A stretch of 64,000 nucleotides of DNA. Origin: Octopus sinensis. Lineage: Eukaryota. The number at the start of each line of letters is the position of its first letter. The stretch's first letter is position 1. The notes below the pieces were generated by a model. That model worked only from the letters and a program-made list of their open reading frames with translations. It had not been told where the DNA came from and made no database searches. Where the stretch lies: positions 68,820,001 to 68,884,000 of the forward strand of contig NC_042998.1 in the NCBI RefSeq assembly GCF_006345805.1, written 5' to 3'. The position numbers were made by a program, and so were the translations under genes. Positions 8,689 through 63,064 of this stretch are shown in pieces.

Positions 8689-63064
<54,376 letters not shown>

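What the first reader, a model, noticed from the sequence alone, without database searches (positions are those of the whole stretch)
32426..32443. 18-nt micro-exon encoding GICPDI in the catalytic region of Pol III, isolated by 11.7-kb and 8.3-kb introns
Seen: strong acceptor and donor, phase 0-0, and exactly the six residues needed between QEDMPFTDQ and [12 protein letters not shown]. Established: this segment lies in the conserved hybrid-binding region shared by all multisubunit polymerases. Skipping would keep the frame but delete core residues. No TGC motif occurs in the 50 nt before the acceptor, which argues against a typical Srrm4-type neural micro-exon. Inference: a constitutive micro-exon probably missed by annotation, or a switch for Pol III activity.
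Basis: partly seen in the sequence, partly recalled or inferred. Interest (0 to 1): 0.75.

Follow-up and report, generated by a model that had tools for sequence, protein, structure and literature searches.

The report
Conserved 18-base exon in octopus POLR3B
The 18-base exon is real and codes for six essential residues of the RNA polymerase III second-largest subunit in an Octopus genome, but it is an ordinary always-included micro-exon that public Octopus gene models already contain and that molluscs and a brachiopod share.

Summary
On the minus strand, 32443-32426 reads cag|GGTATTTGTCCAGATATT|gtaagtat (GICPDI), phase 0-0, between introns of 11,694 and 8,253 nt. Joining 11 GT-AG exons gives a 413-aa open frame. 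It is 100% identical to residues 723-1135 of the public Octopus vulgaris/O. sinensis RPC2-like protein and aligns to human POLR3B 724-1133. So for Octopus the exon is already annotated, and "missed by annotation" is wrong here. It is right for three models in other species: Elysia marginata, Pinctada imbricata and one Magallana gigas model each lack exactly these six residues, and the exon is present in the Elysia and Pinctada genomic loci I read.

The same 18-nt exon, with the same phase and AG/GT borders, is present in Argonauta, Elysia, Pinctada, two clam-like contigs, a chiton and the brachiopod Lingula. An annelid keeps only the downstream intron, and a bird has neither. Cuttlefish-type cDNA contigs include it. 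G and D are invariant in 266 of 266 homologues, and no isoform six residues shorter appears in the ten cluster lists read (RefSeq isoform sets for oysters, scallop, clam and mussels; two other models for Octopus). The best reading is a constitutive, ancient micro-exon recognised through strong splice signals. The "Pol III switch" idea has no support. Interest is low.

The parts
32426..32443 (-). 18-nt micro-exon, GGTATTTGTCCAGATATT = GICPDI, phase 0-0. It corresponds to human POLR3B 922-927 and yeast Rpb2 1005-1010.
32444..32476 (-). Acceptor region. The polypyrimidine tract is 82% Y at -25..-4. A 12-nt block, atattaatacat, lies at -33..-22 and includes a branch-point-like UAUUAAU. The block is identical, and at the same distance, in Argonauta.
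   Evidence: only collinear non-coding conservation: 32476-32419 vs L006 37670-37727, 88%
32418..32425 (-). Donor gtaagtat. All 8 intronic positions are complementary to the U1 snRNA 5' end.
32444..44137 (-). Upstream intron (A), 11,694 nt, GT-AG, full of dispersed SINE-like repeats and microsatellites.
24173..32425 (-). Downstream intron (B), 8,253 nt, GT-AG. It contains a degenerate reverse-transcriptase fragment (26361-26870) and a CA/TA-rich block (31575-31871).
44138..44186 (-). Exon encoding (G)[16 protein letters not shown], 49 nt.
24067..24172 (-). Exon encoding [35 protein letters not shown], 106 nt.
46067..46210 (-). Exon encoding ..[30 protein letters not shown](G).
52752..52875 (-). 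Exon encoding [24 protein letters not shown](M).
55926..56084 (-). Exon encoding [28 protein letters not shown].
62941..63064 (-). Exon encoding [41 protein letters not shown]. It contains the GYDIED motif, which I read from memory as the metal-B acidic pair.
22341..22437 (-). Exon encoding [32 protein letters not shown].
14542..14739 (-). Exon encoding [33 protein letters not shown].
10186..10275 (-). Exon encoding [30 protein letters not shown].
8689..8821 (-). Last coding exon, ..[43 protein letters not shown], ending in the stop codon.

Best explanation
The window carries the 3' half of the Octopus POLR3B (RPC2) gene on the minus strand. The 18-nt segment is a constitutive micro-exon. Two phase-0 introns happen to lie six codons apart inside the hybrid-binding part of the subunit. 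This exon-intron arrangement is ancient: it is shared by five mollusc classes and a brachiopod. It survived while cephalopod introns grew from a few hundred bases to 8-12 kb through repeat insertion.

Shown: the exon exists, is unique in the window, and has canonical borders. It restores a perfect alignment to Pol III subunits. It is present in public Octopus protein models and in cephalopod cDNA contigs, and it is conserved at the protein level with synonymous variation.

Inferred: the exon is too short to hold exonic enhancers, so its recognition rests on three signals. These are a long pyrimidine tract, a conserved branch-point-like block about 27 nt upstream, and a donor with full intronic complementarity to U1. 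Splicing probably goes stepwise, with the exon first joined to one neighbour to make a 67- or 124-nt exon that is then handled normally. That mechanism is known for other mini-exons and was not tested here.

Also inferred: the six residues sit between the GQKG lysine (yeast Rpb2 K987) and the PSRM arginine (Rpb2 R1020), which line the active site. Skipping the exon would therefore give a dead or misfolded subunit, not a regulated variant.
For: Sequence and splice borders. The 413-aa spliced frame is 100% identical to Octopus RPC2-like 723-1135. It aligns to human RPC2 724-1133 at E 1e-237 with one 2-aa gap far from the exon. Pfam finds Rpb2_6 and Rpb2_7.

The same 18-nt exon with AG/GT borders and the same phase is present in Argonauta, Elysia, Pinctada, two clam-like contigs, Liolophura and Lingula. 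Codons differ synonymously among them (GGT/GGA/GGG, TGT/TGC, CCA/CCT/CCG, GAT/GAC). The cDNA contigs L009/L010, whose protein clusters with Sepia pharaonis RPC2, read ...ACAGACCAG GGAATCTGTCCGGATGTG ATCATGAAT....

G1 and D5 are invariant in 266/266 homologues and P4 in 264/266. No member six residues shorter than its representative is listed in the ten clusters read, which include RefSeq isoform sets for oysters, scallop, clam and mussels. The donor gtaagtat and the 82% Y tract are. The only collinear intronic conservation with Argonauta is 33 nt upstream and 7 nt downstream. The numbering against yeast Rpb2 comes (query 3-52 = Rpb2 991-1040).
Against: I could not inspect any RNA-seq or cDNA from this very locus. 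Inclusion in Octopus is inferred from the public protein models and from a decapodiform cDNA. One Magallana gigas UniRef model (A0A8W8JL52) lacks the six residues and could be a real minor isoform rather than an annotation error. Stepwise splicing, the branch point and the effect of skipping on the enzyme are inferences. The AlphaFold model of the isolated fragment was too poor around residues 196-222 to say anything.
Confidence: 0.9

Rival explanations
1. The micro-exon is a regulated cassette exon. Skipping it is frame-preserving and would make an inactive or dominant-negative RPC2 that tunes Pol III output.
For: The 18-nt, phase 0-0 geometry keeps the frame. One oyster UniRef model and two genome annotations lack exactly the six residues.
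Against: The two models whose source is on record, Elysia and Pinctada, sit on large genomic contigs and are submitter annotations, not transcripts; the origin of the oyster UniRef model is not on record. The RefSeq isoform sets listed for oysters, scallop, clam and mussels have no -6 aa form, and neither do the two public Octopus models. G and D are invariant in 266/266 homologues. The splice sites are strong and there is no UGC within 50 nt upstream. Intron conservation around the exon covers only the core signals, unlike typical regulated micro-exons.
Confidence: 0.05
2. The exon is real, but gene annotation for this genome misses it, so the deposited protein lacks GICPDI.
For: This error does occur elsewhere. 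The Elysia marginata and Pinctada imbricata proteins lack the hexapeptide, while the exon is present in their genomes at L004 6389-6406 and L007 16937-16954.
Against: The public Octopus proteins P0360 (1135 aa) and P0361 (1078 aa) both contain ...MPFTDQGICPDIIMNPH... and match the spliced window model exactly. The Argonauta hians model contains it too.
Confidence: 0.03
3. The match is a chance pseudo-exon inside one 20-kb intron, and the true coding sequence lies elsewhere.
For: None beyond the small size of the segment.
Against: One hit against 0.02 expected. It is the only candidate in six frames. The exon lies between the homologous flanking exons, in the same order, in seven other genomic loci.
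Confidence: 0.01

Closest known systems
[quoted passage not shown]
   Same: Rpb2_6 and Rpb2_7 domains are present. The model is 100% identical to Octopus RPC2-like. It scores 791 bits against human RPC2, versus about 344-358 bits against Pol II Rpb2 chains. The [33 protein letters not shown] and GEMERD motifs are all present.
   Different: Nothing differs at the protein level. The gene structure differs from the one vertebrate checked (a bird), where VCGLIV..GICPDIIMNPHGFPSRMTV is one exon.
Constitutive, deeply conserved micro-exons that encode core domain residues and are often missed by annotation (described systematically in plants, PMC8831610)
   Same: It is a tiny exon inside a conserved domain and is conserved across very deep divergences. 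It arises where two flanking introns are retained, and it is lost where one intron is lost. Several annotation pipelines drop it, and it has strong splice signals.
   Different: This is an animal housekeeping gene. At 18 nt the exon is longer than the <=15-nt class that paper stresses. Here it is flanked by exceptionally long introns (11.7 and 8.3 kb).
SRRM4/nSR100-dependent neuronal micro-exons of bilaterians
   Same: The size class (3-27 nt) and frame preservation.
   Different: There is no UGC motif near the 3' splice site in Octopus. The exon encodes invariant core residues rather than a surface loop. There is no evidence of alternative use, and the intronic flanks are conserved only over the core splice signals.
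Mini-exons spliced as exon-intron-exon units, i.e. sequential splicing (troponin I and similar cases; from my own knowledge, not checked here)
   Same: An exon too short for simultaneous binding of U2AF/U2 and U1 and for exonic enhancers. It depends on strong flanking signals.
   Different: The order of intron removal at this locus is unknown.

Membership tests
RPC2/POLR3B | Rpb2 domain 6 (hybrid binding/wall) followed by domain 7 (clamp) at the C-terminus | tested here: met
   PF00562 E 5e-116 over residues 2-320 and PF04560 E 2e-34 over 322-407 of the spliced model
RPC2/POLR3B | Closer to Pol III second subunits than to the Pol I, Pol II or archaeal paralogues | tested here: met
   Human RPC2 791 bits and yeast RPC2 615 bits, against archaeal about 370 and Pol II Rpb2 about 344-361 bits. 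The 57-aa segment gives 114 bits for RPC2 and 58 bits for RPA2.
RPC2/POLR3B | Identity with an annotated RPC2 of the source organism | tested here: met
   Exact match to residues 723-1135 of Octopus vulgaris/sinensis RPC2-like
Micro-exon (internal exon of 30 nt or less) | Length of 30 nt or less with canonical AG and GT borders on both sides | tested here: met
   18 nt, cag|...|gtaagt
Micro-exon (internal exon of 30 nt or less) | Present in mature mRNA | tested here: met
   Indirect for this locus: the public Octopus protein models contain it. Direct in a related cephalopod: the Logan transcript contigs L009/L010 contain it. Junction reads from this locus could not be examined.
Constitutive conserved domain-core micro-exon | Same exon at the same position and phase in distant lineages | tested here: met
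   Cephalopods, a gastropod, bivalves, a chiton and a brachiopod. It is absent where one or both introns are absent: Capitella, a bird, and an annelid-like intronless copy.
Constitutive conserved domain-core micro-exon | No skipped isoform | tested here: inconclusive
   No -6 aa member is listed in the ten clusters read, which include RefSeq isoform sets. One oyster UniRef model lacks the residues. No RNA-seq could be read.
SRRM4-type neural micro-exon | UGC-containing enhancer close to the 3' splice site | tested here: not met
   No TGC in -50..-1 in Octopus, Elysia, Pinctada or the clam contigs. It is present at varying places in Argonauta, the chiton and Lingula, so it is not conserved.
SRRM4-type neural micro-exon | Tissue-regulated inclusion | not testable with these tools
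   No expression data were available.

The most novel reading that the evidence does not exclude
The two introns that isolate GICPDI are both ancient bilaterian introns. Intron B is also in an annelid. An intron at the position of A appears alone in unlabelled metagenome fragments that are closest to amphioxus RPC2. On this reading the micro-exon would be more than 500 million years old. In lineages that keep it, low-level regulated skipping would yield a catalytically dead RPC2 that titrates Pol III assembly.
Probability: 0.04. Interest if true: 0.55.

Novelty: already known. Interest (0 to 1): 0.15.

Why it matters
The finding matters mainly as a quality check. It shows that this piece of the Octopus genome is correctly modelled in public annotation. 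It also shows that at least three mollusc gene models (Elysia marginata, Pinctada imbricata and one Magallana gigas entry) carry a six-residue hole in the catalytic core of Pol III because a micro-exon was dropped. Finally, it is a clean example of an 18-nt exon kept in place across molluscs and brachiopods while its flanking introns grew roughly 10- to 70-fold. That could serve studies of how very short exons are recognised between very long introns. It does not point to new biology of Pol III.

Tried and rejected
1. The first protein search, with the 57-aa spliced peptide, returned only fragments of 100 aa or less. Hit lengths never exceeded about 1.75 times the query length. Full-length named proteins appeared only after I used a 718-aa chimeric query made of the P0121 N-terminus plus the window C-terminus.

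2. I recalled a human POLR3B disease variant at D926, the D of GICPDI. Five literature searches found nothing to support it (papers read). I do not use it.

3. An AlphaFold2 model of the isolated 413-aa fragment had mean pLDDT 62, and below 50 at residues 196-203 and 207-222. It says nothing about the hexapeptide, so I ran no fold search.

4. The look-up of a cnidarian locus (Stylophora, P0317), meant to date the introns, found no record and used the last look-up.

5. Pfam scans of the longest ORFs in the window found nothing. The one exception was a sub-threshold tRNA-synt_1g hit, which I take to be chance.

6. I looked for a second copy or a mutually exclusive alternative of the micro-exon in both introns and found none.

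Full report
**Observation.** The gene lies on the minus strand. Positions 32443-32426 read GGTATTTGTCCAGATATT (G-I-C-P-D-I). They are preceded by a pyrimidine-rich tract ending in cag and followed by gtaagtat. The exon upstream in gene sense ends at 44138 with ..ATGCCATTCACAGATCAG|gtgagt (..MPFTDQ). The next exon starts at 24172 with tttttcag|ATAATGAACCCTCATGGC (IMNPHG..). The three pieces joined give 57 aa that align without a gap to human RPC2 906-962 (E 5e-33), and GICPDI is identical to human residues 922-927. The degenerate pattern AG-GICPDI-GT occurs once in the window, against 0.02 expected even with two mismatches allowed. It is the only G-I-x-P-D-[IL] in six frames. Of the 60 AG-N18-GT sites in the two introns, it is the only one that encodes a compatible hexapeptide. 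No TGC lies in the 50 nt upstream.

**The gene.** A tblastx comparison with two related contigs located eleven exons. I set their borders by hand and checked them by script. All ten introns are GT-AG. The 1,242-nt spliced sequence is one open frame of 413 codons ending in a stop. The introns flanking the micro-exon are 11,694 and 8,253 nt. The product aligns to human RPC2 724-1133 (E 1e-237, with one 2-aa gap in a variable loop) and far less well to Pol II or archaeal subunits. It carries Pfam Rpb2_6 and Rpb2_7.

**Source organism and annotation.** The 413 aa are 97.8% identical to Argonauta hians RPC2-like. The cluster of that protein also holds the Octopus vulgaris/O. sinensis protein (XP_029654611.1, XP_036369816.1, CAI9718326.1). 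The spliced model matches its residues 723-1135 exactly, and both public Octopus models read ..MPFTDQGICPDIIMNPH... The window is therefore Octopus DNA, and the micro-exon is already in the public gene models. This refutes "probably missed by annotation" for this genome.

**Relatives.** I fetched genomic loci for homologues and read the site in each.

| Locus | Organism | Intron A (nt) | Intron B (nt) |
|---|---|---|---|
| window | Octopus | 11,694 | 8,253 |
| L006 | Argonauta hians (octopod) | 4,028 | 2,518 |
| L004 | Elysia marginata (gastropod) | 692 | 649 |
| L007 | Pinctada imbricata (bivalve) | 165 | 617 |
| L001 | clam-like metagenome contig | 894 | 3,006 |
| L002 | clam-like metagenome contig | 1,294 | 1,106 |
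| L011 | Liolophura sinensis (chiton; exon reads GMCPDV) | 487 | 292 |
| L012 | Lingula anatina (brachiopod) | 200 | 241 |

- All of these have an exon of exactly 18 nt, in phase 0-0, with YAG|G...|GTRNGT borders. The exons of the two metagenome contigs are 93-96% identical to venerid clams.
- The codons differ synonymously between species, which shows selection on the peptide.
- The annelid Capitella has only the downstream intron (GICPDI|gtgagt). A bird has neither intron. An annelid-like metagenome copy is intronless.
- Among unlabelled metagenome fragments, some show only an intron at position A, and these are closest to amphioxus RPC2. Others show only intron B. This hints that both introns are old and were lost differentially. 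I could not test that, because the cnidarian look-up failed.

**Transcripts and isoforms.**
- Two Logan transcript contigs encode a full 1,135-aa RPC2 that clusters with Sepia pharaonis RPC2. They contain GGAATCTGTCCGGATGTG between the homologues of the flanking exons.
- Of the 270 longer homologues screened (239, plus 31 cluster members), 266 have the normal 24-residue spacing between GQKG and NPH. Within those, G1 and D5 of the hexapeptide are invariant and P4 is present in 264.
- Three lack exactly six residues: Elysia marginata P0234, Pinctada imbricata P0285, and a Magallana gigas UniRef model, P0383. I read the Elysia and Pinctada genomic loci, and both contain the exon. These look like annotation drops, though the oyster model could be a minor isoform. 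I did not read oyster genomic DNA.
- The ten cluster lists I read include RefSeq isoform sets for oysters, scallop, clam and mussels. None lists a form six residues shorter than its representative.

**How the exon is probably recognised.**
- The acceptor has 82% pyrimidines at -25..-4.
- The donor gtaagtat is complementary to U1 at all eight intronic positions, the best intronic match of the ten donors in the window.
- Between Octopus and Argonauta, the only collinear conserved non-coding sequence in about 20 kb is 33 nt upstream and 7 nt downstream of the exon. This includes an identical atattaatacat at -33..-22, which is a plausible branch site.
- Everything else shared between the two is dispersed repeats, which also explains the intron growth. 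A reverse-transcriptase fragment lies in the downstream intron.
- I infer that core signals alone define the exon, and that it is probably joined first to one neighbour. That mechanism comes from established knowledge of mini-exon splicing and was not tested here.

**The protein.** By the alignment, the hexapeptide corresponds to yeast Rpb2 1005-1010. It lies between the GQKG lysine (K987) and the PSRM arginine (R1020). From my own knowledge of Pol II structures, both of these line the active site. Deleting the six residues should therefore inactivate the subunit. This is inference. An AlphaFold model of the isolated fragment was too uncertain there to help.

**Comparison with known kinds.** This is a constitutive, deeply conserved micro-exon inside a catalytic domain. 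It is the animal counterpart of the class described for plants, where such exons are often missed by annotation (PMC8831610). It does not fit the SRRM4-type neuronal micro-exon class. There is no conserved UGC, the residues are core rather than surface, and there is no evidence of regulation. I found no paper in the held library that mentions a POLR3B micro-exon.

**Verdict.** The feature is already captured by public annotation and belongs to a known kind, so interest is low. The useful by-products are three faulty mollusc gene models and the cross-phylum conservation of the exon.

Noticed in passing
L001 11941-12709, L001 1-420, L002 16306-17411, L002 5467-6154, L002 12372-12753: In two clam-like metagenome contigs (ENA ERZ25073280), several RPC2 exons lie with part of their flanking introns in tandem arrays. 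The periods are 131-358 nt, with 2-7 copies at 90-94% identity, and the arrays include seven copies of the last coding exon. This could be a real expansion or an assembly artefact.
   Followed up: partly
L003 659-4166: An annelid-like RPC2 (87% identical to Capitella) on an ENA metagenome contig is encoded by two long uninterrupted ORFs of 422 and 721 aa. It is either an intron-poor gene or a retrocopy.
   Followed up: partly
window 26361-26870 (minus): A degenerate reverse-transcriptase fragment (Pfam RVT_1, E 4e-10, with stops) lies inside the 8.3-kb intron. The bivalve contig L001 also carries a similar fragment at 19494-19980.
   Followed up: partly
window 24724-25111, 34731-34886, 38676-38746, 39767-39926, 40306-40554, 44669-44831: Dispersed 50-160-nt repeats in the RPC2 introns match many non-collinear places in the Argonauta RPC2 gene at 69-92% identity. 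They look like SINE-like elements shared by octopods and account for much of the intron length.
   Followed up: no
window 31575-31871 and 37134-37383: There is a CA/TA-rich compound microsatellite about 550 nt downstream (gene sense) of the micro-exon. A long AGA/AAC-rich low-complexity block creates a spurious 312-aa ORF.
   Followed up: no
proteins P0234, P0285, P0383: The public protein models of Elysia marginata, Pinctada imbricata and one Magallana gigas UniRef entry (A0A8W8JL52) lack exactly the six residues GICPDI. The exon is present in the Elysia and Pinctada genomic loci I read. Other oyster models keep the residues.
   Followed up: yes
protein P0052: An unlabelled fragment reads ..MPFTDLGICP + 21 unrelated residues + DIIMNPHG... 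This suggests a short in-frame intron inside the hexapeptide, at a different intron position, in some other organism.
   Followed up: no
window 58609-59085 (minus): An ORF in the 62940-56085 intron gives a sub-threshold Pfam hit to class I tRNA synthetase (M): E 0.001, 18.3 bits against a cut-off of 20.1. It is probably chance.
   Followed up: no
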